A program made the position numbers and the translations under genes. The notes beneath the pieces are model-generated. The model was not told where the DNA came from. It did no database searches and saw only the letters and a list, made by a program, of their open reading frames with translations. Source: Macrostomum lignano (Eukaryota). Taken from it: a stretch of 64,000 nt of DNA. The stretch lies in assembly GCA_002269645.1 (NCBI GenBank), contig NIVC01001781.1, positions 1-64,000 on the forward strand, written 5' to 3'. Positions 167-59,600 of the stretch are shown piece by piece (within the stretch, counting starts at the first letter, position 1; every line of letters begins with the position of its first letter).

Positions 167-3687
<3,521 letters not shown>

Positions 3688-5175: not shown

Positions 5176-7935
5176 TCAGGCTTGTAGGTCAGACTCTAGC
5201 GTGGCGGTCAGCGTGGTGGTCCGGCCTTGGCCCCGTCGGAGACGCTCGGTTGGCTGATGCAGCAGGGTGAGCGCCAGCGGGTTTTGCTCCCCTCTGCCAT
5301 AGCTGAGGAAGCAGTGGCCGACGAGCATTAGCCGGCGCCGCTGGAGGGTGGCACTGAGCTGAGGCACGCGGGCTCTCGCCATCAGCAGGTCCGTCGGCAG
5401 CCGCTCGGGGTAATGGATGCCAAGGGCGAACCGCAGCAGCGATCGGTAGGCAGCGTCCAGGGCTCGAGACCTCGAGTCGGTCATTGGCACTGCCTCCAGT
5501 CCGTACAGGAAGATTGGCTCTACGGCAGCGCGGAACAGGCGCATCTTCAGGTCGTCGTTGGCAGCTGAGCTGAAGACCTCCCTGAGGAGATGAGCCGCAC
5601 GCCAGGCCTGTGACCTCCGGTCAGCGATGATGGAGTCAGGGCTCATCACGAGGGAGCACAGGTACCGGAAGTCTCTGCAGACTGAAATATGACTTGCCCA
5701 TCTGGTAGGGTCAGGATTGGTGCTGCATCGGTGCCCACGTGCAGCACCGTGCGTTGATTTGGAGTCGGACTCGGGCGCTCTCCTCATAGAGTCTCGAGAG
5801 CGCTCTCTGGGCGGCAGTCGGACTGCGGCACAGCAGGGCGATGTCGTCGGCGTACGCGAGGGCGGGCAAAGGGGCAGCACCGCGGCGGGAGCTCCGGCGT
5901 GACGCCAGCAGGTAACTGTCCTCTGTGAGGCTTCGGCGCAGCACGTAGTCGACGACAAGGATGAAGAGCAGAGGGGCCAACGTGTCACCATGGAGGACTC
6001 CGGAGCTGGTGCAGAAGTCCTCAGTTGGACCATCGCTGGTTTAGACAAAGGCTTTGCTGTTGTTGTAGAGGTCCATCACTGCAGAGATAAGAGCCGGGGG
6101 GGACACGCCATAGTGCTCGAGCAGCCACGCGATCGCGCGCCGGCACACTGAGTAAAAAGCTTTGCGGAAGTCCACAAAGACAATTGACGCAGCTCTTTGG
6201 TGAGTTTTACAGGCCTCGACGACTGCTCGAAGGGCTGCAATCTGCTCTGTTGTCGAGCGGCCGGGCCTGAAGCCACTTTGGAGGCTCAGGATCATTTGTT
6301 TGAGGCCAGACAGCAGCCGATTACGCAGTATAGCATTGAGCAGCTTAGCCAGAGTGCATTCCAGAGCAACGTCGCGTTGGTTGTCCAGACTGGTGGATGC
6401 GCCCTTCTTGGGGATGGAGACGATCTTAAAGGTGCGCCAGTTGTCAGCAGCAGTAGCATCTGGGTTGCCTCCAAGCGGACAGTGCTTGTTGAGCACAGTC
6501 GTGATGTCCTGTGTCAGCTCCGGCAGCTTGAGCACCCTGGGTGGAATGCCATCTACTCCGGCGGCAGCGTCGGGGCGCATGGTCTTGAGCACTCGGTTCA
6601 CCAAGTAGGCAGTCAGCGGGCCGGAGTTGAAAGTCGAGGGCTCAGCCGGGGTAAAGTTTTCGATCGGCAGCAAAGCAGCAGAGAGCGGTGGAGCGTTGAG
6701 CTCATTGTGGTAGTGAGTGGCCAGCAGGGCTTTGCGATTGTGTATGGACTCAGCACCTACAGCGGCATTGGCCCTCTGCTTCCTGCCAGTCAGGCGGTTG
6801 ATGGCGCGCCAGGCCGCTGTGTGCCGGCAGTTGTCTGTCGCTAGTTGAATTTCAGCAACAGCCTCCTGGACAAAGGCTTCGGTCCTCCGGGCATGCGTGT
6901 CGCGTAGTTGGGCCCGGGCTGTTTCAGCCTGCTCACTGTCTTGGCCAAAGACTGCGGTTGTTCTTTGCACGTCGCGCCTAGCGATGGAGATCTCCTCGTC
7001 GGAGTCCCAGGCGGCTTTTGGCTGGTGCGGTGTTCGTTTTGGTAGGATCGAGGCAGCTTTCTCAACAGCTCTGGTGAAGGCGTCCGCCGATTCATTCAGG
7101 GCCGGAGTAGCATTTTGCAGTTTTTCAATGAACGCACTGTGCGTGTCTGGGTTTCTCAGATCTGCTCAGAGGGGGGTGCGGTGGGCCAGCCTTGAACTTT
7201 TTCCATCGGCAGTCGATGTCGCAGGCCAGCAGAGAATGGTCGGACCTCACGCATCTGGGGCGGATTTGACCACTTTGCGCAGTCGAGAACTGATGGCCGA
7301 AGGGCACAAAATCCAGTCCAGCCTGGTGGTCCGTCCATTTGGGCCGAAGAAGGTGGGCAGCTTGTTGTACCGCTGCCGCATGACACCATTGGCTGCAATC
7401 AGGTCTTGAGAGTGAATGAAAGTTGACAGGAAGTCCGAGTTGGTGTTGGTGGAGCCGCAGTTTTTCTTCACCAGGCGGCCATCAGGGGACAGTGGCGCGT
7501 TGAAGTCTCCAGCCACAAAAAGCAGGTCGCGACCAGGGACCGAGTCGATGAGCAATCCCAGGTGGTCATACATTGACTCAGTCTCGGTAGGGTCAGTAGC
7601 TGTGCGTGGGGCTGTGGGGGCGTAGACGCAGATTACATGAAGGCGCCTGTCCTTCTTGGCAAAAGAGGTAATGTCAAGGCGGTCGGTTGGGAAGCTGGCA
7701 TTCAGAAGGGCCCTTGAGGCACTAGGTGACAGCAGAAACCCGATGCCTCCAGAGCCCTGGGCTGAGGCTGGGGCGGCTCGGAACTGCCAGCCAAGGCCTG
7801 GATCAGCGCACTCTTCGGTGCTCCTGCGGTGTTCTTGGACAGCCAGAATGGAGATGTTCATGCTCTTTGCCAGCTTGGTTAGCTCGTGCAGTCTCCAGGG
7901 GGCAGTGAGCGTTCGTGCGTTGAAGGTAGCAAGTC
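5176..7935 (-). mobile_element. Decayed non-LTR retrotransposon (RTE-like), AP endonuclease + reverse transcriptase
   Basis: APE motifs LATFNARTL, ILAVQEHR, VAGDFNA, RLDWIL. RT motifs IVSIPKKG, QSGFRPGRST, FVDFRKAF, GVLHGDTLAPLLF, LAYADDIAL, FRYLCS. In-frame TAA at 6041 and several frameshifts. Confidence 0.92.
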
Positions 7936-13709: not shown

Positions 13710-13951
13710 AGTGAAATACAATGGTTTTTCTCGGGGTGGCCTGGTAGGTCTTTGAATCCCACCGCTGCCACCAGTGAAATACAATGGTTTTTCTCGGGGT
13801 GGCCTGGTAGGTCTTTGAATCCCACCGCTGCCACCAGTGAAGTACAGTGGGGTTTCTTCCCGGTTTAGGCCCCTGCGGATTACCTTAAGTCTCGAGCCTC
13901 TTCAGAGGGAAGTTCTCTCAAATCTCAGTAGCGTAGGTAATGCTGCCACCA
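13710..13951 (-). promoter_or_regulatory. Multiplied tRNA-Leu primer-binding site (two full copies, one partial)
   Basis: Plus-strand GAATCCCACCGCTGCCACCA at 13754-13773 and 13817-13836 equals the 3' end of tRNA-Leu including CCA, in a 63-bp tandem unit. GCTGCCACCA also at 13942-13951. Confidence 0.85.
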
Positions 13952-14500
13952 GTTCCTTCAGGTCTCGGCCTTCGGTGAGGTGAGCTTCCCGTCGGAACGA
14001 AATAAACAAGTCAACGAACTCAGCACAGCGTGCAGATTTGCAGATTAATGAACAAGGCGTCCTGATCAGCAGATCCCCGCCGGGCTCAGGGGTGACTGGG
14101 AAGGCAGTGTTAGCCTCCCTTAGGCTTGGGCTTTAGTGGGGTCTCAGTCAGACCAGTACAAACGGATTCAGTACGCAAAGGGCACTTAGTTAGACACTGA
14201 CGCACACGGGATCTTAGTGAATTCTCCGCAGATAAGAAGCCAACTCCTTGACGGAAACAAGGGGAGAGGGGTCCTATTTATTAGCGGGAAACACCCACGC
14301 ACAAGACCTCGTGACTTGTTCTATTTTTAGAACTGACGTCACTTGAGATCTCGAGGCAGGGTCTCAGTGCGCGCAAGACCTCGTGACTCGTTCTATTTTT
14401 AGAACTGACGTCACTTGAGGTCTCCGGCCAGAGTACACGCGGCTGTGACTCAGTTGCTATTTTTAGCAACATGAGTCACTCCTCTCCTTAGAGAAGGGAG
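13838..14500 (-). mobile_element. LTR (3' portion) of an LTR retroelement; internal region absent; 5' LTR boundary unresolved (up to ~15160)
   Basis: On the minus strand: duplicated enhancer-like block (14302-14347, 14374-14419) with TGACGTCA, AT-rich TATA-like box ~14275-14283, end ...TGTACTTCA, then the PBS. Confidence 0.65.
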
Positions 14501-15711
14501 GGGTCCGAAAGCACGTGATTCTCCCGGTAAACAGGGCCAACGAGTGCAGTAAACATGTTTACTGCACTTTAGGACTCGAAGAACGCAGAGTCTGTCATGT
14601 GACTTGCTCACATGACAGAGGAAAACGGGACGGGAACGAAACAGAGACAGCCCACAGCAGAGAAGCTGAGGGCTGAGAACAGAGACGCCGAAGGGCAGAA
14701 CAGGCCAAGGGCAGCAACAGACGGGCCAAGGGGGGCGGGAAGCTGACCAGCGGCAGACAGCAACCCAGGGCGAGGGCGAGGGAGACTGCTGACAAAGTGG
14801 GACGCCTAACATCAACTAGCGGATCACTACATAAGAGAGAGAAGATCAGGCTATGCAGAAAAAGAGAAGAGGGATAGCAAGGGAGCAAGGAGTGGAAAGG
14901 GAGTAAAGAACTGAGGAGAGACAAAATTCGAAGATGAGAGACAAGAGGATCGATGAGAGAAGAGGAGAAGAGAGCTGGGAGAGAGGGAGATCGGAGCTGA
15001 GATGGGGGGATCGAGAAGAGATACGAGAGGATCGGGGATCGATAAAAAGAAGAGGAGTATAGAAGGGAGAGAAGATCAGAGAGAAAGAGGAGAGAGAAGA
15101 TATTAGAGAGAAAAGCTGCAAAGACACAAGCCTTCAGCTGGCCGCATTGCAATTGTGAAGTACATGTATATGAAGTTTCAAAACGACTAATACAGTATAT
15201 ATATAGGGCCGCGTGTAAAGATCGAAGCTAAGCGGGCCACCCGTGGCCCGCCGGCAGGATTTTGCCAACACTGGTTACATAGTAACTTGAATTCGATGCA
15301 CATGTAACTGCAGTACATGTACAATTACTTGCATGACTTATAGCTGCAGGGGGTCCAGGCATCCGGATGCAGCGAGGAGGCATTGCTGTCCAGTTTGCTA
15401 ATCCCAGGCGACATGCCTTAGTGAAATTATTTGTTCAGTTTTTTAGTTTTACCTAGCAACTGCTATATTTTATAATTTCTGTTTAAGATTATGTACCTTT
15501 GTTTTTACTGTTTCGTATTGCGCAAATTTAAAACGGTATTCTGTTTGTTAAAAATCGCCGCATGGCCATGGTTAGCCTGCTTTATGCATGCATAAAGGAT
15601 ATCTCCTGCTTTTACAGTCGCAGAACAAGTCTAGTAGATTCTTCTACTATAATACAATAGTTTAACACTAAGTTGATCTATTCTGCAGAATACTCATTTC
15701 AAGAATATGCC

Positions 15712-18700: not shown

Positions 18701-21700
18701 TTCTACCAGTGTAGCTTGGGATGTGTGGGACTGCACATTGTCATATAGCAGAAAAATGCCAACATGCAGTTTCCTAGGTTGGCATTTGACTAGCTGCAAC
18801 TATAAACCAGCCAGGGATGCCATATAGCACTTAGAGTTAAGGTCTGGCCTTTCTTTAGGTAGTCAATAAAGATGACTCCTTCACAGTCCTAGAAAATTGT
18901 TACCATTGTTTTAGTGATAGCTGGTACTGCCTTGGCCTTGGTTGGGGAGGGCTCTCCAAGGGCCATCCAAACTTTGGAATGCTGTTTAGTTTCAAGGTTG
19001 TAGTGTGGTAACTAGGTTTTGTCAATGGTAACAAAATTATAATAAATAATAATCTAGTAATAAGATCACCTCTCTTTTACCTTTTTATAATTGTATTATA
19101 AGTATTTTGGTAAAAGTTTTGCACTTTTGGAAAATATTAAGTGCTAAATTGGCTATTTTGGCACCTAAAGTTTCTTTTTCAAGTGCATGAAAACTGGAGT
19201 TATCAAAAAGTAACTTATACTTTAGGTTTAGGATCTTAAAACCAAAATGTAAAACCTTGGGTAACTTGGCTTGCTACTATTGTTGGCATTGCTACTACCT
19301 CTATAACCTTAAAAGAACTATCTTGTTTTTTAAAAAGCAGTTGAGACAAGGTTTTATAGCTTTCTTAGTGGTGTTGACCTAGGCACTGACCTAGAAACAC
19401 AAGTACCACTTTTTTTCAAATTGGTTAATATTAGAAATCTTGAATTTCTTAAGTGGTGGCTCAATACTCTTGCAGTATGTCTTGTACAAATCTGCTTCTT
19501 TCTTCTTTTCCAGTGATACAATTTGGTTAGAAACTGTCAAAGAATACTTTAGAATTATAGTTTGGGCCTTTGGCCATTATTATTGGATGGTTCATTGTCC
19601 TCATCTTTTTCTTCATTATCTGCTTCATTAGCATCACTATCTGTATAACAGTTCTTTAGAACACTTAGAATTTTAGTCAATAGATATCTCCTTGTCAAGA
19701 TTCTCAAATGTAGCTTCAATATTATAAGTATCTTCAGAAAGGTATTCAATAGTTCATTCAGCAATTTTAATGGTAGCATAAGAGCCAAGCTTGACAATAA
19801 CAGCATCATGAAATCCATTTTGATCTTTAAAGTTGGATTTTTAAATGCTCCTTAAATTCCATTTTTGTAGCCTTATCAATATGACTAAGAAAACAAGAAT
19901 TTACACAAATAACTCCACTGTGTATATTTGTCTTTGGGAACTATAAAATTACATGTTTTAAACTTAAGGTTGCAAACTTGTCAAGTTTAGTAGCTTGTTT
20001 TGAACAAGAAACTCTACTATCTCTTGTCCTATTGAAAGATTCTCAAAGTGAAAAAAAAATAAAGTAATGGAGGTTCAAATTTTTTTAAGTTTACATATGT
20101 AATAAAAATTACAAATATAATAAATAAATATGTATAAAGTCTAGTAAAAAATATAAATAGCTAAAATAGGGACTTTAGTAAGGGTCCTATGCAGTTATGG
20201 ATCCAGAAAATTTTTGTGGGGGAGGGACAAGCTATGCTACTATATCAAGCACTATAACCCAATATTGGAAAATGGACCTTGCATTGTTGCAAGCCAAAAA
20301 ATATGGCCCATTTTTACCTTGGCTGAAAAATGTGGGCCTGGCCCCCTTTGCCCCCCCCCCCCCCTGGATCCACTGGTCCTTTGACTTGCCAACATGCATA
20401 GAAAACAAAAGGGAAATTTGACTTAAAGGGTGGTGGCTCATGTATGGCAAATGAATTAACCTTATGTAACTCCACCTTATAAGCTTAAGTTCACATAATA
20501 GTCCCTAATTGTCCCCTTGCTTGTTATCTCCTATTTCAGGTCCAATATCAGAGTGCATGGACATTTTTATAATTTTAACAAATATGCCATCTTTATAAGC
20601 AACTTAATCAGGATAAATATATGTACTTTTATTTACATAGCAGTTTTTATGGTACACTTTTTGTATACTAGAATTTTCACTTGAGCCATATATACACAAG
20701 AAAATGTAGTGCATTGAAAATCACAAATCTTGAAATCTTAATGATGATTACAAATTTAACCAGGGAGCCTTATTAACTCTTTTCTGGCAATGAGCATTGT
20801 CATAGTTACACTGAGAAACTGCAAGTCTATGTTGAATTCAATTTATAAAGCAACTATGTGATAGAATAATCCTACAGAAATTGACCAAACACCATTGCCA
20901 TTACTAGGCTGTTTCGCCTGCGGCATGTGCAACGGATTTCGTATTTACAACACCGAGCCGCTAAAAGAGAAAGAGCGCCAAGATTTCCCAGGGGAATCTG
21001 GCAGTGGCGGTGCAATGGGCGGCGTTCGTCTCATTGAGATGCTCTACAGGTGCAATTACGTTGGCCTGGCATTTTCTAACAATCCCAAATATCCGCCTAA
21101 CAAGGCCGTCATCTGGGATGATGTGAAGAAAAAGTTTGTCATTGAAATGGAATTTGCTAGCGAAGTGCTGGCTATTAGACTAAGAAGGGAGAAGTGAGTG
21201 AATTTTTATGTACAGATTGATCCCATTTCTAAACCTACAGATTGATCCCATCTCTAAACCTACAGATTGATCCCATCTCTGAATCTACAGATTGATCCCA
21301 TCTCTAAACCTACAGATTGATCCCATCTCTAAACCTACAGATTGATCCCATCTCTGAATCTACAGATTGATCCCATCTCTGAATCTACAGATTGATCCCA
21401 TCTCTAAACCTACAGATTGATGATGGGTCTAAACCTACAGATTGATCCCATCTCTGAATCTACAGATTGATCCCATCTCTAAACCTACAGATTGATCCCA
21501 TCTCTAAACCTACAGATTGATCCCATCTCTGAATCTACAGATTGATCCCATCTCTGAATCTACAGATTGATCCCATCTCTAAACCTACAGATTGATGATG
21601 GGTCTAAACCTACAGATTGATCCCATCTCTGAATCTACAGATTGATCCCATCTCTGAATCTACAGATTGATCCCATCTCTAAACCTACAGATTGATCCCA

Positions 21701-24700
21701 TCTCTAAACCTACAGATTGATCCCATCTCTAAACCTACAGATTGATCCCATCTCTAAACCTACAGATTGATCCCATCTCTAAACCTACAGATTGATCCCA
21801 TCTCTGAATCTACAGATTGATCCCATCTCTGAATCTACAGATTGATCCCATCTCTAAACCTACAGATTGATGATGGGTCTAAACCTACAGATTGATCCCA
21901 TCTCTGAATCTACAGATTGATCCCATCTCTAAACCTACAGATTGATCCCATCTCTAAACCTACAGATTGATGATGGGTCTAAACCTACAGATTGATCCCA
22001 TCTCTGAATCTACAGATTGATCCCATCTCTAAACCTACAGATTGATGATGGGTCTAAACCTACAGATTGATCCCATCTCTGAATCTACAGATTGATCCCA
22101 TCTCTGAATCTACAGATTGATCCCATCTCTAAACCTACAGATTGATCCCATCTCTAAACCTACAGATTGATCCCATCTCTAAACCTACAGATTGATCCCA
22201 TCTCTGAATCTACAGATTGATCCCATCTCTAAACCTACAGATTGATGATGGGTCTAAACCTACAGATTGATCCCATCTCTGAATCTACAGATTGATCCCA
22301 TCTCTGAATCTACAGATTGATCCCATCTCTAAACCTACAGATTGATGATGGGTCTAAACCTACAGATTGATCCCATTTCTGAATCTACAGATTGATCCCA
22401 TCTCTAAACCTACAGATTGATCCCATCTCTAAACCTACAGATTGATCCCATCTCTAAACCTACAGATTGATCCCATCTCTGAATCTACAGATTGATCCCA
22501 TCTCTAAACCTACAGATTGATCCCATCTCTAAACCTACAGATTGATCCCATCTCTAAACCTACAGATTGATCCCATCTCTAAACCTACAGATTGATCCCA
22601 TCTCTAAACCTACAGATTGATCCCATCTCTAAACCTACAGATTGATCCCATCTCTGAATCTACAGATTGATCCCATCTCTAAACCTACAGATTGATCCCA
22701 TCTCTAAACCTACAGATTGATCCCATCTCTGAATCTACAGATTGATCCTATCTCTAAACCTACAGATTGATTCCATCTCTAAACCTACAGATTGATCCCA
22801 TCTCTAAACCTACAGATTGATTCCATCTCTAAACCTACAGATTGATCCCATCTCTAAACCTACCGATTGATCCCATCTAAACCTACAGATTATCTACAGA
22901 GTGATCCAATCTCACTATCCTCTCACCCACAGGATCGTTATCGGTCTGCACACAGCCGTGAAAGTGTTCACATTCACCCAGCCGCCCAGCCTGTTACACG
23001 TGTTCGAATCGAGCCCGAATCCCCACGGTTTAATAGCACTGTGCCCCTCGTCTGACCGGCAACTATTAGCCTTCCCCGGGCACAGCAGTGGGTCGGTGGC
23101 CCTGGCCGATCTGGGCCAGCCAGACCGACCAAAAGGCCAATCCGCTAATCTGCTGCACGCTCACGAAGGCAGATTGGCGGCCCTATCTATGAACAGTCGC
23201 GGCACATTGTTAGCAACTGCATCTGAGAAGGGCACACTGATTCGCGTGTTTCAACTGCCTCAACAGCAGCAGCAGCAGCCGCAGTTGCTGCACGAGCTCA
23301 GACGAGGATCTCAGCCTGCCCGAGTTTATTGCGTCACATTCAGCTCCGATAGCGGGTTGCTATGCGCCGCTTCCGATCGAGGCACCGTACACGTGTTCCG
23401 ATTAGATTATAATGATCAACAGTTGAGTCAGCGGGCTAGCGGCGAGTCTCAACAGCAGCAGCATCACGCTCTGGAAGCTTCGCCAGCAACTGCTGCCGCT
23501 TCTGTAGCAAAATTCTTTAGTCAGGTTACTAGCGTAGCCAGGTTGCCAATACAGCCAGGCGTGCCGACTGTCTGCGCCTTCGGACAGGATAGCTTAGGCC
23601 GCACCTGTTCGCTTATTGGTGAGATATTTGATGTTCATTATGCTACTTGTTAGTAGGATATCGATCTAAATAATGTTAGCGCCTAATAGGCAATGACCTC
23701 CAAAAGAAGTTCTAATATTGAGTCCCCTAATTGAACATCAGGTGTTATTGAGTCCCCTAATTAAACATCAGGTGTTTATTAAATCCCCTAATTAAACATC
23801 AGATGTTATTAAGTCCCCTAATTAAACATCAGGTGTTATTAAGTCCCCTAATTAAACATCAGGTGTTTTTAAGTCCCCACAATGAAACATGATGTGCTAT
23901 TGAGTCCCCCTCTAATCGAACATCAGGTGTTATTGAGTCCCCTAATTAAACATCAGGTGTTATTGAATCCTTCAAAAAATTGCTAGCATGCCAATGTTCT
24001 TAAAAGTATCGGCGACATTGGTCAGTCCTAATGATGAGTATAAATTTGTTTTAGAGAGCCTACCTTTCATTTATTGGGCGATGAGCATTGTCATAGTTAC
24101 TCTGAAGGACTTGAGTTGTTATTGGATTTTAATGATCATTGTTCAGCCGTGCAAGATTGTACAAAAATCTTGTCTATTTGAGTACATATAATTGCTTAGG
24201 TTACTAAAACTATTTTACAGATAGAGTTCTAATGATGAGTATATTAATCTTTTCGAGAGCCTGTAGGCTTTTAGCCTTTGCATTATTTGGCGATGAACGC
24301 TGTCATAGTTACTCTGAAGACTCTTACGACTTTAAATAGTGTAGGTTGATAGATTCATTTTTGTGTATTTTGTTTATAATTTGGAGTCTAGATGATGAGT
24401 AAACATATTTTCAGGAGCCTGATTTGCTATTTTTTGGCAAAGACTATTGTCATAGTTACACTGATAGACTCCATTATATTTAGTTCTTTATAGTTATAGA
24501 CTGGCTCACTTTAAAAAGCGACATTGTCACACAACCGGCGAGAGGCATTACTGCCCATTCCGCCGACTCCCCTGATCATACGATCAGGTCCAGCCAAGCC
24601 AAGATCAGCTCTAGACTGCTAGCTCATGGAGGGGGCGTTGCTGAAATGCTGTGGCTCATGGTGGGTGCTAAGATGCTTTGATCCTAAGCTCATAGCGGAT

Positions 24701-29339: not shown

Positions 29340-30662
29340 AAGAGCGACTCTTGGGATATCCTGATAAGGGTGACACTAGGGGTGTCTTGATAAGAGTGTC
29401 ACTAGGGTTGTCTTGATAAGGGTGACACTATGAGTGTCCTGATAAGAGTGACACTAGGGTGTCCTGATAAGGGTGACACTAGGGTGTCTTGATAAGGGTG
29501 ACACTAGGGTGTCCTGATAAGAGTGACACTAGGAGTGTCCTGAAGGGTGACACTATGAGTGTCCTGATAAAAGTGACACTAGTGGTTTCCTGATAAGGGT
29601 GACACTAGGAGTGTCCTGATAAGGGTGACACTATGAGTGTCCTGATAAATGTGACACTAGGAGTGTCTTGATAAGGGTGACACTAGGGTGTCTTGATAAG
29701 GGTGACACTAGGAGTGTCCTGATAAGGGTGACACTAGGATTGTCCTGATAAGGTTGACACTAGGAGTGTCCTGATAAGGGTGACACTAGGGGTGTCTTGA
29801 TAAGAGTGACACTAGGAGTGTCCTGATAAGAGTGACACTAGGAGTGTCTTGATAAGGGTGACACTAGGAGTGTCCTGATAAGAGTGACACTAGGAGTGTC
29901 CTGATAAGGGTGTCACTAGGAGTGTCTTGATAAGGGTGACACTAGGAGTGTCCTGATAAGGGTGGCACTAGGAGTGTCCTGATTAGGGTGACACTAGGGG
30001 TGTCTTGATAAGGGTGACACTAGGAGTGTCCTGATAAGGGTGACACTAGGAGTGTCCTGATAAGGGTGTCACTAGGGGTGTCCTGATAAGAGTGTCACTA
30101 GGGGTGTCCTGATAAGGGTGACACTAGGAGTGTCCTGATAAGGGTGACACTAGGAGTGTCCTGATAAGGGTGACACTAGGATTGTCCTGATAAGGGTGAC
30201 ACTAGGGGTGTCTTGATAAGAGTGACACTAGGAGTGTCCTGATAAGAGTGACACTAGGAGTGTCTTGATAAGGGTGACACTAGGAGTGTCCTGATAAGAG
30301 TGACACTAGGAGTGTCCTGATAAGGGTGTCACTAGGAGTGTCTTGATAAGGGTGACACTAGGAGTGTCCTGATAAGGGTGGCACTAGGAGTGTCCTGATT
30401 AGGGTGACACTAGGGGTGTCTTGATAAGGGTGACACTAGGAGTGTCCTGATAAGGGTGGCACTAGGAGTGTCCTGATTAGGGTGACACTAGGGGTGTCTT
30501 GATAAGGGTGACACTAGGAGTGTCCTGATAAGGGTGACACTAGGATTGTCCTGATAAGGGTGACACTAGGAGTGTCCTGATAAGGGTGACACTAGGAGTG
30601 TCCTGATAAGGATGACGCTAGTGGTTTCCTGATAAGGGTGACACTAGGGGTGTCCTGACTAG
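29340..30662. repeat. 26-bp minisatellite (~50 units)
   Basis: Unit CCTGATAAGGGTGACACTAGGAGTGT; each unit carries the inverted pair GACACT/AGTGTC. Confidence 0.98.
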
Positions 30663-31935: not shown

Positions 31936-36663
<4,728 letters not shown>

Positions 36664-46100: not shown

Positions 46101-48125
46101 ATGAATATTTTATCTCCAGTATTCGCCCTCGGAATTCTGCTGTCACTGTCAACTCCAACAGTTCGAGCTGCATCGCTGGTTAACAAAAGTTCAAGCAATG
46201 CCAACACGGTCAGCCTGTTTGAGGATACGAATCCCCCCGCTTCTGTGGCTAAAAGACCCGCCATCGTGAAACCCGTGCTGAAATTTGAGCGAGTCTGCGA
46301 TCCGCTTGTTGGCTACAGTGGATTGTACAGAAGGCACCCTCTAGTGCTGCCTTTGGCAATCAGTTTGTCCAGAAGTTCGAACGCTCCTGCAGACTATGTG
46401 GCAACCGACATCAAGCTGAGCGTTGATGAAGCTCTGAAATCCACCTTGCTTGATGGCAGTGAAAGCTCCACAGTCAAGTTGTTGGTCCAGCTGAAAAGGC
46501 GGCAGCCAGATGAGATAGGAGCAGGACAGCTGGTGTTCCTGTGCAGTGACTTCACCAGATGCCAGTAGTTGAGGGAATCGATCGAAGATGATCCAGAAGA
46601 GCTCTGGCGTTCTATCAGATTTTCTATCGAATTGAAACCCACTGTAGAGCCGTCATCGAACGTCGAATCAAAAGTTATTCGATTTGACAATCTTCGACCT
46701 GTCAATCTGCCAGAGCTGGCCTGCGAGTCCAGATCTGACTGGATTGTATTTCAGAGGCGCGTTGACGGCAATCTTTCCTTCGCTAAGAATTGGGACGCCT
46801 ACGTGAATGGGTTTGGAAATCCTGAATCCAACTACTGGATGGGTGAGTTTGCTAGTTGAAAACTCAATCAGAAGGTGCAGGAGGTGCTTCACGACGTTTC
46901 ACCCTGACACAAGTGTACACCTGGGAATGCATGCAGCAATGAAGAAAAAAACAATTAATTTAATTTCTTTAGCTCGATAAATTTTCAATATCCTGCTTTC
47001 GAGGCGAATACGTTTGCAATTAGGGGGTGTGGCCTAGTGGTTAGGGCGTCGGACTCACGACTTAAAGGTCGTGCGTTCGATTCTAGATCCATCTGGAAAA
47101 ATTTGTGCCCCTGAGCAAGACACTTAACTCTGCATTGCTTCAGTTCACCCAGCTGTAAAATGGGTGCCAGCATTAGCTGGGGTATTTGAGGCCGTGTGTG
47201 GCGACCCCCAGTCCTTGGACTGAACAGCCGTACGTAGCCTTCAGATGCGCCTCGCAATAGCTGAGGCTGAGCACATCTGGCCATTTAGGGCAGGTGTAAT
47301 CAATTACTAATTTTATTATTAGTATTATTATTATACGCGTTTTTGTCTGGGACCTTAGAGTTTGGGTGCTCTCTTTCTTAAGATAGATGTCTAGCGGTCT
47401 AAGGTTCGTACAGCTCTAATCCTGTCGTAAGCTGTTCGTACAGCTCCTTTGTTCACTGTTGGGCACACTCTCGTCATTAATCGTTTGATTAGTTGATCCG
47501 ATAGTACCGGAAGCTAGATAATTAACGTACCATAAAATATTAACTTTATATATGTTAACGTTTTATAGTAGGGGAGAGGGAGAGTGAGTGAGAAAACAAA
47601 AGTAAGGACTAATAGTAACGAGCAACGTAACAACGCTTTATTGAATTCCCTGACTGAAAAACGTCATCCTCAGGTCTTGAACGACTGTTTCAATTGACTG
47701 CCACGGGCAAGAAGAGCAGCTACCATGACACCTCCAGGTGTCGGCTGCGCATTGACCTGCGCGATTTCAATGGCAACAGCTACCGGAGCGAGTACGGCCT
47801 GTTCCAGGTGCTGGATTCCGGTCAGAACTACCGCTTAAGAGTTGGACAGAAGGTGCCAAATTCTCAGATTGATGGGTTCGCTTCGGTGCACAGCGAATCT
47901 CAGTTCAGCACCTACGAGAGGAGCAATGACAGACTGCCTGGGGACTCCTGCTCTCAGCTATACGGCTTCGGCGGCTGGTGGTACAATGCCTGCCACCACG
48001 TCAACCTCAACGGCGCCTACCTGACTAACAGAAACATCACGGACAGTCCGATCTACGCGTCCTTTCGTCGGGATGGAAAATTTGTGCCGGTCATGTTTAC
48101 CGAGATGAAGCTAAAATGCGGCTGA
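46101..48125 (+). CDS. Secreted fibrinogen-related-domain (FReD) protein, 2 exons, with in-frame TAG at 46566-46568
   Basis: Signal peptide. FReD motifs WIVFQRRVDGNLSFAKNWDAYVNGFG...NYWMG|LERLFQLT, LRIDLRDFNG, FSTYERSND, GGWWYNACHHVNLNG. Intron 46843-47673 GT-AG phase 1. Confidence 0.88.
47023..47263 (+). mobile_element. tRNA-headed SINE with CORE-like domain (family B)
   Basis: A box TGGCCTAGTGG, B box GTTCGATTC, then CCCTGAGCAAGACACTTAAC...TTCAGTTCACCCAGCTGTAAAATGGG, resembling the MIR CORE. Second copy at 56482-56720. Confidence 0.85.
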
Positions 48126-49449: not shown

Positions 49450-51519
49450 ATGATAGACCTTGCAGTTATCGTTTTAATTCTCTGCTTCGCCATGGGTCTA
49501 CTTAGTTCATTCCTGTTCACGGTGGCTCTGTACCTTTATCAGATGTCTCGCCCACCTGCCGAGACAGCAGAGACGGCGGCAACGGTTTCACAGAAGCAGC
49601 ACTGCGCTCCGGTTTCGGCCACTTCAAACGTGAAAAAAGCGAAATCAAAAGCTTTGAAGAAAACCGACATCGAAGCCGCTGCTGGCGATGGAGACGCGAT
49701 GAACGATAAACGAACGGATGAAGATGGCAGCACGACCACCACCAGCTACACCAGTTGCGAAAGATGCAGCCAAGGTCTCGTGCCTCAGCGACAGGAACAG
49801 CAGCAGGAGAAACGCAGACAGCAGCAGCAGTTCCTCAGCAGCTGGACGGAGGACACCCCAGCTGGCGGCAGCGCTGGGATTTACACCTGCGAACTGTGCG
49901 GTTCCTGCTGCGCTGGAGATAGTCGAAAGGTGAAAATTGATTTATTGATATACAGATTTTTTTGTCTGAATCAAGTTCGAACAAAATTCTGAAATTTTCG
50001 CAAAATTTTATGCATGTTATTCTGTACGGTATCTCACCTTTCATCTCAGACCTATCGACCCATGGACGCTGGAAGCATTGACGCCGAGTTGTGCATCGAC
50101 AGGTCCTCGGTTCGATTCCGGCGTTGTCGTACCGGAGTCGGAGCCTATTTCTTCAATCAGAACGGCAAAGACCAACAAGCAGCCTGCGGGAATCCCGTGT
50201 CCGCAGTGTCGGCTACATTGTCACTGCCGGCCGAGACAGGTTGCATGTACCACCTTCGTTTCTGCACCACCAATGGAGAATTGCATTCAGCCAAAATCAA
50301 TAAATGCTGCGACTGCCGATCGATACTGTGCTTCGAATTGATTAAAATATTGAAGCAATGCCCAGACGGTGCTAACAACGGCGAGACAATTCTGTTTGTC
50401 AATCGGTTGCGACAGAAGCGCAAAGAGTTCAAACGGTCTTTTGGACAAGTTTCTATCCAAGAAATCGACTCCTGGTTGGTGGCGATTTTAACAGACTCCG
50501 TTTCTAATGAAGCCACCATCGCCTATAGCGGCATGACGAGAAAGTTTGTACAGATTGCCAGACAGCCAGACAGTCAGTTGGTTCTGCAGTTGTGCCTGCA
50601 AGCCCAGCAGACCCAGTGCCTGGAGCCCTACTCCAATATTGTGCAGGACTGCGATGGTAAGACACTCTGTCCTTTACTGCCAGCTTGCAAAAAAAATTTG
50701 GAAACCGTCTACTATGTAGTACAATGTAAAGTTAAGTGTGAAGCAAAGTGTGAAACACGAAGAAAAGCACAGTGTGAAACACGAAGAAAAGCACAGTGTG
50801 AAACACGAAGAAAAGCACAGTGTGAAACATGAAGAAAAGCACAGTGTGAAACACGAAGAAAAGCACAGTGTGAAACACGAAGAAAAGCACAGTGTGAAAC
50901 ACGAAGAAAAGTACAGTGTGAAACACGAAGAAAAGCACAATGTGAAACACGAAGAAAAGCACAGTGTGAAACACGAAGAAAAGCACAATGTGAAACACGA
51001 AGAAAAGCACAGTGTGAAACACGAAGAAAAGCACAGTGTGAAACACGAAGAAAAGCACAGTGTGAAACACGAAGAAAAGCACAGTGTGAAACACGAAGAA
51101 AAGCACAGTGTGAAACACGAAGAAAAGCACAATGTGAAACACGAAGAAAAGTACAGTGTGAAACACGAAGAAAAGCACAGTGTGAAACACGAAGAAAAGC
51201 ACAATGTGAAACACGAAGAAAAGCACAGTGTGAAACACGAAGAAAAGCACAGTGTGAAACACGAAGAAAAGCACAGTAAAAAGCGCAGGTGTAAAGCTCT
51301 GCACGAATTAACACGTGAAGCAACAGTGTAAAAGCCTGCGGGTCTTATCAGACATTAATCCCATAAGCTGGTCGCCCGTTTTTAATTTCGCTCAATGCAG
51401 ATCAATCGGCGCAAGGCGATCTGGGCGTTCGGTCGCCAATTTCAGCCGAGCAGCTGCTCAAAAAGCAGCAACAGCAGCGGCAGCAGCAGCGCCACATTCG
51501 AAGAAAGCGACACCGAATG

Positions 51520-55164: not shown

Positions 55165-56102
55165 TAATGCGTGCCTGCGGCGCTCAAATGAGTGCCTGCG
55201 GCGCTAAAATGAGTGCCTGCGGCGCTCAAATGAGTGCCTGCGGCGCTAAAATGCGTGCCTGCGGCGCTCAAATGAGTGTCTGCGGCGCCAAAATGAGTGC
55301 CTGCGGCGCTAAAATGCGTGCCTGCGGCGCTCAAATGAGTGCCTGCGGCGCTAAAATGCGTGCCTGCGGCGCCAAAATGAGTGCCTGCGGCGCTAAAATG
55401 CGTGCCTGCGGCGCTCAAATGAGTGCCTGCGGCGCTAAAATGCGTGCCTGCGGCGCTCAAATGAGTGTCTGCGGCGCCAAAATGAGTGCCTGCGGCGCTA
55501 AAATGCGTGCCTGCGGCGCTCAAATGAGTGCCTGCGGCGCTAAAATGCGTGCCTGCGGCGCCAAAATGAGTGCCTGCGGCGCTAAAATGAGTGCCTGCGG
55601 CGCCAAAATGAGTGCCTGCGGCGCCAAAATGAGTGCCTGCGGCGCTAAAATGAGTGCCTGCGGCGCTAAAATGAGTTCCTGCGGCGCCAAAATGAGTGCC
55701 TGCGGCGCCAAAATGAGTGCCTGCGGCGCCAAAATGAGTGCCTGCGGCGCTAAAATGAGTTCCTGCGGCGCCAAAATGAGTGCCTGCGGCGCTAAAATGC
55801 GTGCCTGCGGCGCCAAAATGAGTGCCTGCAGCGCTAAAATGGGTGCCTGCGGCGCTAAAATGAGTTCCTGCGGCGCCAAAATGAGTGCCTGCGGCGCTAA
55901 AATGAGTTCCTGCGGCGCCAAAATGAGTTCCTGCGGCGCCAAAATGAGTGCCTGCGGCGCTAAAATGAGTTCCTGCGGCGCCAAAATGAGTTCCTGCGGC
56001 GCCAAAATGAGTTCCTGCGGCGCCAAAATGAGTGCCTGCGGCGCTAAAATGAGTGCCTGCGGCGCCAAAATGAGTGCTTGCGGCGCTAAAATGAGTGCCT
56101 GC
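55165..56102. repeat. 21-bp minisatellite (~44 units)
   Basis: Unit GCGGCGCTAAAATGAGTGCCT. Confidence 0.98.
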
Positions 56103-56481
56103 AATCCAATGCCAGTACTTGATACATGTAAGCAGTCTGCATAATGGACTGCTGATGACAGAAGAGCGAGAATATAATGTCCGTCAGTCAAGCTAATAAA
56201 TAAATACGACATTTTATATAAGGGTGGATTTTCGTAGATTTTCGATTTGGCTTGCTTGCACCCTGAAGCGAGAGCGCCAGCGAAAGAAGAAATAAAAAAG
56301 CCGATGAAACACCCAGTTCGCGCCTGTCCTCGCCGTTAGGGTGGCTGCAGCGTCAGCAGCAGCACCTCTTGCTCTGAATGTGAGCAGTACGACTCGGCGC
56401 GGATGATGCGGCCCATGTCATCAGGCCAGTGGCGCGTCGGTGACTCCAGTTGGATCAGATGTGCAACCGACAGCTCAGCCG

Positions 56482-56720
56482 CAGCTATTGCGCGGCGCAT
56501 CTGAAGGCTGCGTACGGCTGTTCAGTCCAAGGGCTGGAGTGTCGCAACACACCCTCAATTACCCCAGCTAATGCTGGCACCCATTTTACAGCTGGGGTGA
56601 ACTGAAGCAATGCAGAGTTAAGTGTCTTGCTCAGGGGCACAAATTGTTCCAGTGGGATCGGGATCGAACCCCCGACCTTCAAGTCGTGAGTCTGACGCTC
56701 TAACCACTTAGCTACAACCC
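56482..56720 (-). mobile_element. tRNA-headed CORE-like SINE (family B), second copy
   Basis: Reverse complement of 47023-47263 (CCCATTTTACAGCTGGG, TTAAGTGTCTTGCTCAGGGGCACAAAT). Confidence 0.85.
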
Positions 56721-57526
56721 ACTCGGCTACATGTGGAACAAGGCTTACTGTTTTAGGGAGTCCGTTAAATTTTTTTAAAACAAACTGAAAGCTATAGCAT
56801 TAGTAAAAAGCATTTCCCGGCAGGCTAAACCTTTACGTTCGATCTGGGCTAGGCTCAACTACCCAGCAGGGAGGTGCGTGACGGACTCATACATAGGATG
56901 CTTATTGTAATTGTGAACACAGTTGTGATTCACGCTCCTAATTTGAATGGATTGTGACGAATATCTGGTCCGATAGTTCGCGTGCAGACGGGCTGCTATT
57001 CAAGTAGTGATTAAAAACACAGTAGTGGAGACCGATAACTGACGGTGCCGATTATCGATTACGGATTATGTATATTTGTAGGTTACAGACACGAACGGTA
57101 CATGTAGTGGTAAATAGCTTATGCTAAACAGGTACTTGGTAACGAACAGCTGCAGTGTCGATGGAACGGCTGCGAAGATGACCTTAGTGGGAAGCACTAC
57201 TTAATCGAGAGCAATTTTGCACTACTGTTTATCAATGTTTACGGTCTACGGAAATTAAATTGCTGGCGATAGGAACAGCAGCCGACTCCTCGACCAGTCT
57301 TCTCCGAAGCCACAGAATTCAAAATGTTAAATATAACTATTTAACTTCAGTAAAACAAAACATTGTTTACTATTGTCAATAAACATAGAAATGAAACCAA
57401 TCGATATAAATAAAATACATATTAAATATTTTAGTAGATATTAATCGACGAATTGGGAGAGTAAAAGAACCGCCAACGTCACATGATAGAGCATATTTCA
57501 GTCTATAAAACTCGCGTGTACTACCA

Positions 57527-58456
57527 GGGTGTTGAGTTTATAAATGCAGGAACGAGTCTTGTCTCTATCGGTTTTTGTCTCGCATAGAGACGCCTAACCG
57601 CAGTCACTTCTGTGAAACTTGTCTCTGCCTGGCTGAAAGCTTGTAATGAGTGAGTAGGCTGGGTTGGAGGGTAATAGTGGATCGGGAGGGGCTGTGGGTA
57701 GCTGTATAGGAAGGCAGGCCTATACCTGTACCAAGGTGCTCTGACGGTATCCCTCAGGCGCCCTCTGAGCGTACAGCCAGCGACCCTATTAAAGCTGGAG
57801 TGTGCCAGAACCAGGACTGAGTCTGAGCAGGACGAGACCGTTTGCACGGTCACAATAGAAATGGCGGGTTGGCGAAGCAAAGGGTGAAACAGTCCCGGCG
57901 ATTAGCCCTCCTGCCGCTTCAAAGATAAGAGACTGTCTGTTGGCAAGAGTACCCGGGGTTTAGTTGGGGGGGAGGCTCCTTCGGGTTGCCACGGCCGTGG
58001 GGAGCGGTCAAATGACCGGCATTGGCTTAACTAACCCAGGAGTAGGCACGGGCTTCCCTGAATGGTTCACTCAACCCCCTCTGGCCCCGGGGAGGTTTTT
58101 GATTTGTACCCGGGGGTGGTGGGCGATCGGCCCCAGCATGGTTGCCACGGCTCTAGGCCTTCGGGCCATCTCTAATAGGCTTTGGGGGCCTTCTAACCTG
58201 GTTTTTTGGGCACGGGCTTCCTGACTGGTTCGTCGAACCGCTGTCACTATCCCCCGGGGAGGTTTGGTTTTTTGATACTGCCCTGTACAGTCCTCTAGTC
58301 TAATTTGGCTTTTAGTGTACATGAGTACACTCCCAATCTGGAATCTAAATTATCTCTAGTGGCGTAAGAGCCTTTTTACTTAGGCTGAGGCGCCGGAAGT
58401 ACTTATCATAGTCATAGTCATAGTGGGTGTTGAGTTTATAAATGCAGGAACGAGTC
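57527..58456 (+). other. Direct-repeat-bounded, non-coding, hairpin-rich element of unknown class
   Basis: Identical 32-mer GGGTGTTGAGTTTATAAATGCAGGAACGAGTC at 57527-57558 and 58425-58456. (CATAGT)3 immediately before the right copy. Internal tandem domain 57949-58278. Confidence 0.8.
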
Positions 58457-58895
58457 GTAAATAGGACAGGAACCTTTGTTTAATTGTTTCGTAGAAAACG
58501 TTCTGAAGGCTGGACGCTACGAAGATTCCGAACTTTTTTACGGCACGAAATTGTCTTTTTGAAAGCAGATCCAAAACTGATTTTTAGTTTAACGTGTCTG
58601 TTTTATTGTTCGATTGTTTTCGTACAGAATTTTTGAAAAGTAATTGTGATCAATGCATGCGTTTTATCTAAAAATATGAAAAACATAAAAATGACGCAAT
58701 TCTCTAAGCTTTTTAAGACACGAAGTTTCCCGTTCTACTACTTTATAGTAGTGAGGTCTCAGAATTCTCAAGAACTTCATTGGCTGTGGGCTGCTGTCTG
58801 TATAAATGCAAGCGCACCGAACTGGATAGACTAATTTAGCTTAAACTTTTAGCAAAACCACTGGTTGACAACCAGGCCATTCTTATAAACGATCC

Positions 58896-59600
58896 ATGAC
58901 GCTACCAAAGCAGCTGCTCGAGCTGACCCTGGTTGCGGGGCTGGCAGCAGCCCTCGCCTCTGGCGCCTGCATCGCTCCGTTTATTGACAGGCTGGGCAGC
59001 TGCGTCTTCATCGGCAGCACCCCATCCAGCTGGTGCGACGCCGCCAGACTGTGCCTGGACATCGGCGGAGAACTGGCAATGGACCTGACTGCCATCAGAG
59101 CTGTCAATCACTGGGTTGATTATTACTTCATCGGAGTGACGGACCTCCTGGCTGAGGCGGGCACGTCTCGCAGCGGCTGGAGATTCGCCAACGGCTCGCT
59201 GTTCCCGACTTTGGATGGCAGCGACTGGATGTCCGGCATGCCGAACCACCATTCAGCAGATGATGACTTTGCAGCGGCCAGCATTGCAGGCCTGCGAGAC
59301 CAACCAGGGTCTGCAAGTAGACAGTTCGTTTGCCAGCCGATTGCCACGCCGAACAGCAAGTACCTGGAGCGAGCGGAGTTCCTGAGGCTGGGCAACATCA
59401 GTCCTGTCTACTGCTACACTGACGCCTCAGTGAGCTCGAAGTTTCGCTGTCTGAGGCTCTGTGTGCAGCGCTGGCAGTGCCGGGCCGTCCTGTTCAACCG
59501 GGCCAACGGCGCCTGCCGCATGCTGGACTTCGCTGACTCGAGCGTCGGCGACGCCATCGAGACCGACCCAAACTGGGTTAAGTTCGTCAAAGTGTACTGA
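58896..59600 (+). CDS. Single-exon secreted C-type lectin + PAN/apple domain protein, 234 aa
   Basis: Signal peptide. CTLD pattern SWCDAARLCLDIGGELA...YFIGVTD...GWRFANG...WMSGMPN...FVC. PAN pattern C.RLC.....CRAVLFNRANGAC. Confidence 0.88.
   Translation: MTLPKQLLELTLVAGLAAALASGACIAPFIDRLGSCVFIGSTPSSWCDAARLCLDIGGELAMDLTAIRAVNHWVDYYFIGVTDLLAEAGTSRSGWRFANGSLFPTLDGSDWMSGMPNHHSADDDFAAASIAGLRDQPGSASRQFVCQPIATPNSKYLERAEFLRLGNISPVYCYTDASVSSKFRCLRLCVQRWQCRAVLFNRANGACRMLDFADSSVGDAIETDPNWVKFVKVY

What the first reader, a model, noticed from the sequence alone, without database searches (positions are those of the whole stretch)
57527..58456. 0.9-kb non-coding structured element bounded by an exact 32-bp direct repeat with a hexamer-repeat tail
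Seen: identical 32-mers 898 bp apart and (CATAGT)3 at 58407-58424 against the right copy. The interior is GC-rich, lacks a credible ORF or tRNA head, and is dense in hairpins (GTCTCTAT/ATAGAGAC 57561-57591, GTATAGG/CCTATAC 57704-57725, CTCAG/CTGAG 57753-57769, ACCGT/ACGGT 57837-57850). Known: target-primed retroposition leaves TSDs and simple-repeat tails, and retrozymes or cDNAs of circular RNAs leave terminal redundancy. Inference: an undescribed non-autonomous structured-RNA retroposon, or an endogenised ~898-nt circular RNA. It sits ~440 bp upstream of the lectin gene.
Basis: partly seen in the sequence, partly recalled or inferred. Interest (0 to 1): 0.75.

Follow-up and report, generated by a model that had tools for sequence, protein, structure and literature searches.

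The report
Retroposon insertion upstream of flatworm lectin gene
An 866-bp non-coding, GC-rich piece of DNA with a (CATAGT)3 tail sits between two exact 32-bp copies of its target site upstream of a lectin gene in the flatworm Macrostomum lignano; it looks like an ordinary recent retrotransposon-type insertion, not a circular-RNA relic.

Summary
The sequence facts hold. Exact 32-mers lie at 57527-57558 and 58425-58456. (CATAGT)3 at 58407-58424 abuts the right copy. The 866-bp interior (54% GC; flanks 35-38%) has no credible ORF, tRNA head or Rfam match.

The "structured" claim is not supported. The fold energy is within the range of shuffles: z = -1.67 for the whole insert, and no 120-nt window falls below -2.

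The window is bases 1-64000 of contig NIVC01001781.1 of Macrostomum lignano (Mlig_3_7), a repeat-rich neopolyploid flatworm.

Best reading (confidence 0.6): a recent target-primed retroposition. Nicks 32 bp apart gave the target-site duplication. The RNA ended in a hexamer repeat preceded by two hairpins, as in "stringent-type" LINEs. The insert is either a 5'-truncated LINE 3' part or a full-length non-autonomous element; three TTGTCTC motifs at its very start hint at the second.

No hammerhead or other ribozyme, rod-like fold, LTR or Pol III feature was found, so the retrozyme, viroid-like, solo-LTR and SINE readings fail.

I could not obtain other copies or an empty site. Only 91 kb of this genome was reachable, and it holds no second copy. 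Whether the 32-mer is target or element sequence is therefore inferred, not shown. Ordinary; low interest.

The parts
57527..57558 (+). Left copy of the exact 32-bp direct repeat (inferred target-site duplication), 44% GC
57559..58424 (+). 866-bp insert: non-coding, 54% GC. Sense strand taken as + because the simple-repeat tail is at its right end.
   Evidence: No second copy in window plus paralogous contig.
57559..57625 (+). 5' terminus with three TTGTCTC heptamers (57559, 57575, 57619), the first at base 1 of the insert. Includes the hairpin GTCTCTAT/ATAGAGAC at 57561-57591.
   Evidence: 5 occurrences on this strand in the whole window, 3 of them here; hairpin; window z = -1.31
57952..58109 (+). 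Internal module A of a diverged head-to-tail duplication (starts CCGGGG, ends ..CCCCGGGGAGGTTT..TTG.TAC)
   Evidence: (D6)
58110..58278 (+). Internal module B, the second unit of the same duplication. Its best conserved core 58209-58265 is 76% identical to 58045-58098.
58314..58331 (+). Perfect 7-bp hairpin AGTGTAC-ATGA-GTACACT in the 3' terminal region
58361..58394 (+). Two-tier hairpin GGCGU..AGCCU-loop-AGGCU..GCGCC, 12 nt upstream of the hexamer tail. Candidate reverse-transcriptase recognition stem-loop (inferred).
   Evidence: windows 58279-58398 z = -1.66; 58305-58424 z = -1.94
58407..58424 (+). (CATAGT)3 tail abutting the right repeat copy
58425..58456 (+). Right copy of the exact 32-bp direct repeat
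58896..59600 (+). Neighbouring single-exon ORF (234 aa): signal peptide, C-type lectin-like domain and PAN domain. A TATA-like box lies at about 58800. Context only, not part of the element.
   Evidence: Not annotated or on record.

Best explanation
The 866 bp at 57559-58424 is a recent retroposed copy of a non-coding RNA, made by target-primed reverse transcription (TPRT) by a non-LTR (LINE) enzyme. Inferred steps: the endonuclease nicked the bottom strand opposite 57526/57527. The freed 3'-OH primed cDNA synthesis on an RNA whose 3' end was (CAUAGU)n, preceded by two hairpins. That is the 3' architecture recognised by 'stringent-type' LINE reverse transcriptases. The top strand was cut 32 bp downstream, and fill-in of the stagger produced the exact 32-bp target-site duplication. 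The insert has no ORF. It also carries six runs of four or more T on its sense strand, which would stop RNA polymerase III. It is therefore not a SINE. It is either the 5'-truncated 3' part (long 3' UTR) of an autonomous LINE, or a full-length, Pol II-transcribed non-autonomous element that borrows a LINE's enzyme. Three TTGTCTC motifs, starting at the very first base, favour a defined 5' end and so slightly favour the second variant. Shown: the repeat, the tail, the composition jump, and the absence of coding capacity, ribozymes and known RNA families. Inferred: the TPRT origin, the role of the 3' hairpins, and the LINE partner. The insert lies about 345 bp upstream of the TATA-like box of a C-type-lectin/PAN gene. 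No effect on that gene is shown.
For: The 32-bp repeats are exact, unique in the window and do not extend. The simple-repeat tail lies exactly at the junction with the downstream repeat copy, the polarity expected for TPRT. Composition jumps sharply: insert 54% GC, flanks 35-38%. The 32-mer is intermediate at 44% GC. There is no further short duplication outside the 32-mers, which would be expected if the 32-mers were element sequence. There is no ORF, Pfam or protein homology in any of six frames. Six T runs of 4 or more on the + strand and the lack of a tRNA, 5S or 7SL head exclude Pol III. The most stable local fold is the 3'-terminal 120 nt just before the tail. Stringent-type LINEs (L2, CR1, RTE and other clades) are recognised through a specific 3' stem-loop tail and are the majority of LINEs (PMC4176376, PMC1636434). 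The host is M. lignano, about 75% repeats, whose paralogous subgenomes differ mostly by long insertions (PMC10733133). The same window holds an RTE-like LINE, two SINE copies and a paralogue-specific 1.1-kb LTR-like insertion, so transposon insertions between the paralogous copies of this region are visible here.
Against: No second copy and no empty site were obtained, so TSD versus element-encoded terminal repeat is not settled by data. No RT-encoding partner ending in (CATAGT)n was found. The only LINE in the window shows no similarity. A 32-bp TSD is at the long end for LINEs. No microhomology is visible between the priming end and the tail. The folding evidence for the 3' hairpins is weak (z about -1.9). 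No Rfam family, including any LINE 3'-element models the library may hold, matched.
Confidence: 0.6

Rival explanations
1. A non-autonomous Penelope-like-element (PLE) insertion. The true unit would be 898 bp (57559-58456), ending in the 32-mer. The left 32-mer would be the optional 30-40-bp 'tail' or a minimal partial tandem that PLE reverse transcription leaves.
For: PLE copies characteristically carry a 30-40-bp extension ('tail') at one end and form partial tandems (PMC8557442, PMC11167929, PMC3846280). 32 bp falls in that range. Flatworms harbour PLEs: the Perere clade is named in PMC3846280.
Against: No hammerhead core, no Rfam hammerhead, no pseudo-LTR of hundreds of bp, no inverted copy and no RT/GIY-YIG remnant. 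No short outer TSD flanks the 32-mers. The 32-mer is lower in GC (44%) than the insert, and the hexamer repeat would lie inside the element rather than at its end.
Confidence: 0.08
2. A retrocopy of a host Pol II non-coding RNA, or of the 3' part of a host mRNA, mobilised in trans by a LINE. It would be a one-off processed pseudogene-like insertion rather than a transposon family.
For: Single copy in the 91 kb available. No coding capacity. TSD present.
Against: The tail is a hexamer repeat, not poly(A). Stringent-type LINEs rarely mobilise RNAs that lack their own 3' tail (PMC4176376). There is no sign of a parental gene, though this is not testable here.
Confidence: 0.1
3. A DNA-level rearrangement. 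A fragment from elsewhere was captured at a staggered double-strand break, or by replication template switching, and fill-in duplicated 32 bp. The (CATAGT)3 would be incidental.
For: Long duplications can flank captured DNA. Nothing ties the insert to an RT. The genome is rich in tandem repeats and indels (PMC10733133).
Against: The simple repeat sits precisely at one junction with the right polarity. The composition boundaries are clean and the repeats exact, as in transposition.
Confidence: 0.1
4. A cDNA of a roughly 0.9-kb circular RNA (retrozyme, viroid-like or obelisk-like agent). The 32-mer would be terminal redundancy from more-than-unit-length reverse transcription.
For: Only the geometry: 1.04 unit lengths and a size in the retrozyme range of 600-1000 nt (PMC5680766 abstract).
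Against: No hammerhead core. No hammerhead, hairpin, HDV-like, twister or other ribozyme family at E<=10. The MFE is multibranched, not rod-like, and there are no long inverted repeats. Stability is not beyond shuffles. No ORF of the size expected of an obelisk or delta-agent protein. No LTRs. No match in viral contigs.
Confidence: 0.03

Closest known systems
Stringent-type LINE 3' ends and their 5'-truncated copies (L2/CR1/RTE-type; eel UnaL2 and zebrafish ZfL2 are the studied cases)
   Same: Insert flanked by a target-site duplication. The 3' end consists of hairpin(s) followed by a short tandem-repeat tail rather than poly(A). The copy carries no functional ORF, as in most genomic LINE copies. 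In this kind of LINE the 3' tail is recognised by the element's ORF2 protein (PMC4176376, PMC1636434).
   Different: No RT or endonuclease remnant and no partner LINE identified. No similarity to the RTE-like LINE in the same window. No Rfam model matched. A 32-bp TSD is long for this group (from general knowledge, not tested). The 5' end looks defined rather than randomly truncated.
Non-autonomous LINE-dependent retroposons (SINEs in the broad sense)
   Same: Short, non-coding, TSD-flanked, and expected to share only a 3' tail with a LINE.
   Different: No Pol III head (tRNA, 5S or 7SL) by ARAGORN or Rfam. Six T runs of 4 or more on the sense strand. At 866 bp it is two to four times the size of a typical SINE. 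The genuine tRNA-derived SINE of this genome is present in the window and is unrelated.
Penelope-like elements with their 30-40-bp 'tail' and partial tandems
   Same: A 32-bp direct repeat at the two ends is the length of the PLE tail (PMC8557442, PMC11167929).
   Different: No pseudo-LTR, hammerhead, inverted copy, RT/GIY-YIG remnant or outer TSD.
Retrozymes and animal hammerhead circRNA repeats
   Same: Non-coding, several hundred nt, with terminal redundancy in the genomic copy.
   Different: The defining hammerhead ribozymes are absent on both strands. There are no LTR-like repeats of about 350 bp, and the duplication is 32 bp rather than about 4 bp.

Membership tests
Non-LTR (LINE-type, TPRT) retroposition product | Target-site duplication flanking the insert | tested here: met
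   Exact 32-bp direct repeat, unique in the window, 0 expected. That it is target rather than element sequence is inferred.
Non-LTR (LINE-type, TPRT) retroposition product | Poly(A) or simple-repeat tail at the 3' end, abutting the downstream TSD copy | tested here: met
   (CATAGT)3 at 58407-58424, directly followed by the right 32-mer
Non-LTR (LINE-type, TPRT) retroposition product | RT/endonuclease coding sequence in the copy, or sequence identity to the 3' end of an autonomous LINE | tested here: not met
   No ORF, Pfam or protein hit in six frames. No similarity to the window's RTE-like LINE. The genome-wide search for a partner was not possible.
Non-LTR (LINE-type, TPRT) retroposition product | Dispersed copies with a different TSD at each locus; empty site at an orthologous or paralogous locus | not testable with these tools
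   Only 91 kb of M. lignano DNA was reachable, with no second copy. Paralogous contig NIVC01004197.1 projects to end near window 52.6 kb, and look-ups near the site failed.
SINE | Internal Pol III promoter in a tRNA-, 5S- or 7SL-derived head; no Pol III terminators inside | tested here: not met
   No tRNA and no Rfam hit at E<=10. Six T runs of 4 or more on the sense strand.
Retrozyme / hammerhead circRNA element | Hammerhead ribozyme motifs in the terminal repeats | tested here: not met
   No CUGANGA...GAAA core in the insert on either strand. No Rfam hammerhead family at E<=10.
Retrozyme / hammerhead circRNA element | Circular RNA of unit length in vivo | not testable with these tools
   Needs RNA data (RNase R treatment, divergent RT-PCR)
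Penelope-like element | Pseudo-LTRs or partial tandem or inverted copies; RT plus GIY-YIG ORF or its remnant | tested here: not met
   Only a 32-bp repeat, with no inverted copy. No protein similarity.
Penelope-like element | Optional 30-40-bp 'tail' extension at one end | tested here: inconclusive
   The 32-mer has the right length (PMC8557442, PMC11167929), but it cannot be shown to be element sequence without other copies.
Solo LTR / LTR retrotransposon | TG...CA termini and a 4-6-bp TSD | tested here: not met
   The insert starts TTGTCTC and ends CATAGT. The duplication is 32 bp. Contrast the genuine LTR-like insert at 13712-14831 with TG..CA termini and a TAAG TSD.
Viroid-like / obelisk / delta-like circular RNA | Rod-like or highly self-complementary fold; ribozymes; for obelisks and delta agents, a characteristic ORF | tested here: not met
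   Multibranched MFE and no long inverted repeats. z = -1.67. No ribozyme. Longest ATG ORF is 83 aa.

The most novel reading that the evidence does not exclude
The insert is a full-length member of an undescribed family of Pol II-transcribed, non-coding, non-autonomous retroposons of Macrostomum. It would have a defined 5' end marked by three TTGTCTC motifs, two tandem ~165-nt GC-rich modules, and a 3' hairpin plus (CATAGT)n tail that hijacks a stringent-type LINE. It would be a long 'SINE-like' element without a Pol III head.
Probability: 0.2. Interest if true: 0.35.

Novelty: new member of a known kind. Interest (0 to 1): 0.17.

Why it matters
As it stands this is a routine annotation item: one recent retroelement insertion in a genome that is about 75% repeats. 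It has modest local value. The insertion lies about 345 bp upstream of the TATA-like box of an unannotated C-type-lectin/PAN gene. It is young (TSD still 32/32 identical), so it could serve as a subgenome- or line-specific marker in this neopolyploid model flatworm. It could also help define an active LINE/non-autonomous pair there. If the element proved to be a full-length non-coding retroposon with its own 5' motifs, it would add a member to the small set of Pol II-type non-autonomous LINE parasites. Nothing here touches an open question.

Tried and rejected
1. Other copies by DNA. Self-BLAST and nhmmer of the insert against the window and the paralogous contig gave none. Motif scans used two motifs conserved between the internal modules. 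Viral contigs: 0 hits. JGI metagenomes: 0 hits, then 4 chance hits with no extended similarity. Bacterial/archaeal genomes: one 25-nt chance hit. Phage collection: none.

2. Other copies through spurious ORFs. A six-frame translation of the insert searched against 5.8 billion proteins gave nothing.

3. Empty site. The lectin ORF, the eIF2B exon ORF, the fibrinogen-gene ORF and two further ORFs are not on record. I reconstructed the 695-aa spliced eIF2B-epsilon protein, but the look-up refuses spliced products.

4. Similarity of the 32-mer to the lectin TATA region (58789-58810, 17 of 22): chance level, 168 of 500 shuffles.

5. Similarity of the insert's 5' end to the 3' UTR of the RTE-like LINE in the window, seen by eye: not significant, 94 of 300 shuffles.

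6. A possible zinc-knuckle remnant in frame 2 at the 5' end (CLYRFLSRIETPNRSHFCETC...): too short to test and no protein hit, so dropped.

7. Covariation between the two internal modules: two sequences with an uncertain alignment, so not usable as evidence of structure.

8. Literature. No paper holds the tail or any k-mer of the insert. The M. lignano transposon paper covers LTR elements only and has no text supplements.

9. CATTGTCATAGT at 20795, 24086 and 24927 belongs to an unrelated short repeat family.

Full report
WHAT IS IN THE SEQUENCE

The 32-mer GGGTGTTGAGTTTATAAATGCAGGAACGAGTC occurs at 57527-57558 and 58425-58456 and nowhere else in the window, even allowing three mismatches. None of 100 shuffles gave a match. 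The repeat does not extend by a single base on either side.

Between the copies lie 866 bp (57559-58424). They end in (CATAGT)3 at 58407-58424, flush against the right copy. The insert is 54% GC. The left 500 bp are 38% GC, the right 400 bp are 35%, and the 32-mer itself is 44%.

The insert has no convincing coding capacity:
- The longest ATG ORF is 83 aa.
- The 119-aa TTG ORF on the minus strand reads out through the left repeat into the flank.
- The three longest ORFs have no Pfam hit.
- A concatenated six-frame translation found nothing among 5.8 billion proteins.

ARAGORN finds no tRNA. Rfam finds nothing at gathering thresholds, and only three noise hits at E<=10 in 57300-58700.

STRUCTURE CLAIM

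- The tool's 20 shuffles gave z = -2.46 for the + strand.
- My 200 dinucleotide-preserving shuffles gave z = -1.67 (10 of 200 at least as stable) for the + strand and -1.14 for the - strand.
- Fourteen overlapping 120-nt windows gave z between +2.0 and -1.94. The GC-rich middle is less stable than its shuffles. The best windows are the last two, which hold a perfect 7-bp hairpin (58314-58331) and a two-tier hairpin (58361-58394) 12 nt before the tail.

So 'structured' is not established. At most the 3' end is mildly structured.

FURTHER ANATOMY

(a) 57952-58109 and 58110-58278 are two diverged head-to-tail units of about 160-170 bp. Each starts with CCGGGG and ends with CCCCGGGGAGGTTT...TTG.TAC. 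Their cores are 76% identical. Covariation between only two units, with an uncertain alignment, is not usable as evidence.

(b) The heptamer TTGTCTC occurs five times on the + strand of the whole window. Three of these are in the first 67 nt of the insert, and the first is base 1 of the insert. This suggests a defined rather than a randomly truncated 5' end.

(c) Six T runs of 4 or more lie on the + strand. They would terminate RNA polymerase III.

WHERE THE WINDOW COMES FROM

A WIPI3/PROPPIN exon (22901-23650) is 99% identical to BOX15_Mlig033971g1 of Macrostomum lignano. The look-up of that protein returned NIVC01001781.1:10913-39058, which is 100% identical to window 10913-39058. The window is therefore bases 1-64000 of that contig of assembly Mlig_3_7, GCA_002269645.1.

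A second contig, NIVC01004197.1, is a paralogous copy. It is about 95% identical and full of indels. M. lignano is a neopolyploid. Its assembly holds three paralogous subgenomes with about 2% SNP divergence, but over 30% divergence once long insertions are counted. About 75% of the genome is repeats (PMC10733133).

The window shows this directly:
- a degenerate RTE-like LINE at about 5176-7861 on the minus strand (RVT_1 and Exo_endo_phos);
- two copies of a tRNA-derived SINE;
- dozens of minisatellites;
- a 1120-bp TG...CA insert with a TAAG duplication at 13712-14831, absent from the paralogous contig.

INTERPRETATION

The combination seen here is the standard footprint of target-primed reverse transcription:
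- an exact duplication of flanking-type sequence;
- a simple-repeat tail exactly at the junction with the downstream copy;
- a sharp composition change at both junctions;
- no further duplication outside the 32-mers.

In that model the bottom strand was nicked opposite 57526/57527. cDNA synthesis started on the (CAUAGU)n end of the RNA. The top strand was cut 32 bp downstream.

A non-poly(A) repeat tail preceded by hairpins is the 3' architecture of 'stringent-type' LINEs. Their ORF2 protein recognises its own 3' stem-loop tail, and they are the majority of LINEs (PMC4176376, PMC1636434).

The lack of an ORF, together with the Pol III terminators, means the insert is one of two things. It is either the 5'-truncated long 3' UTR of such a LINE, or a Pol II-type non-autonomous element. 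The TTGTCTC cluster at base 1 leans towards the second. I give the TPRT reading 0.6 overall.

WHAT SPEAKS AGAINST IT, AND THE RIVALS

I could not obtain any other copy or an empty site, so the key distinction is inferred from anatomy only. That distinction is a different flanking repeat per copy versus the same 32-mer everywhere.

1. Penelope-like element. This is the most serious rival. PLEs leave a characteristic optional 30-40-bp 'tail' and partial tandems (PMC8557442, PMC11167929, PMC3846280). Here, however, there is no pseudo-LTR, no inverted copy, no hammerhead and no RT/GIY-YIG remnant. There is also no short outer duplication.

2. Retrozyme or circular-RNA cDNA. This needs ribozymes or a rod-like fold, and neither is present.

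3. Solo LTR. The termini and the 32-bp duplication rule this out.

4. One-off retrocopy of a host RNA, or DNA capture at a staggered break. These cannot be excluded, but they do not explain the tail's position as well.

ATTEMPTS TO REACH DECISIVE DATA

DNA motif scans of viral, metagenome and prokaryote collections gave nothing or chance hits. The phage collection gave nothing.

The paralogous contig projects to end near window position 52.6 kb, about 5 kb short of the site. Contiguous ORFs near the site are not on record. The look-up tool refuses spliced proteins, and I left it at that.

Two eye-catching similarities proved to be chance:
- the 32-mer versus the lectin TATA region;
- the insert's 5' end versus the RTE-like LINE's 3' UTR.

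CONTEXT

The ORF 440 bp downstream (58896-59600) is lectin-like. It has a signal peptide. Residues 33-158 match DC-SIGN-family C-type lectin domains (E 2e-4), and a PAN domain follows (E 4e-5). It is neither annotated nor similar to anything in the protein collection at E<=1e-3. No effect of the insert on it is shown.

VERDICT

The 'structured RNA' and 'circular RNA' readings are unsupported. This is most likely an ordinary young retroelement insertion of an unclassified family in a very repeat-rich genome. One BLAST of the insert and of the joined flanks against the public assembly would settle it.

Noticed in passing
window 5176-7861 (minus strand): Degenerate RTE-like non-LTR retrotransposon. 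An APE-type endonuclease ORF (7247-7861) and an RT ORF (6041-6970, with a further ORF at 5176-6048) are split by frame breaks. The 3' UTR is short (about 100 bp) with no simple-repeat tail. It is unrelated to the 866-bp insert.
   Followed up: partly
window 56473-56720 (-) and 47024-47272 (+): Two 90%-identical copies of a roughly 250-bp tRNA-derived SINE. The borderline Rfam tRNA hit at 56653-56721 (29.1 bits against a threshold of 29) is the head of the first copy. The second copy lies in an intron of the fibrinogen-like gene.
   Followed up: partly
window 13712-14831 versus L002 about 1264: A 1120-bp insert with TG...CA termini and a 4-bp TAAG duplication is present in the window but absent from paralogous contig NIVC01004197.1. 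It looks like a solo LTR or short LTR element gained after the genome duplication. It shows that the empty-site test works in this genome.
   Followed up: partly
window 46101-48125 (+): Fibrinogen-related (FReD) gene with a signal peptide. A clean GTGAGT...CAG intron runs from about 46847 to 47661. An in-frame stop at 46566-46568 sits between the first ORF and the FReD domain, so this is either a small unrecognised intron or a pseudogene. Not on record as an annotated gene.
   Followed up: partly
window 58896-59600 (+): Single-exon C-type-lectin plus PAN-domain ORF with a signal peptide. It has no annotated counterpart and no homologue at E<=1e-3 among 5.8 billion proteins, although PDB C-type lectin domains match at E 2e-4. 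It may be an unannotated, fast-evolving immune-type gene.
   Followed up: partly
window 20795, 24086, 24927 (+): Three copies of a short interspersed repeat (...CTTAATGATGA..GAGAGCCT..GGCGATGAGCATTGTCATAGTTACACTGA...) flank the WIPI3 exon region. Family not identified.
   Followed up: no
window 2547-2920, 21211-22891, 29359-30658, 35501-35887, 50741-51277, 55166-56102 and others: Very high density of micro- and minisatellites. Examples: (CTGT)93, (CAGA)97, a 25-bp unit x67, a 26-bp unit x50 and a 21-bp unit x45. Several lie inside introns of the WIPI3 and eIF2B-epsilon genes and create long spurious ORFs.
   Followed up: no
L002 13590-16176 (-): The paralogous contig carries an annotated 407-aa DUF1647 gene inside the WIPI3 gene range. 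It is not annotated in the window's copy, so this is either a gene-content or an annotation difference between the paralogues.
   Followed up: no
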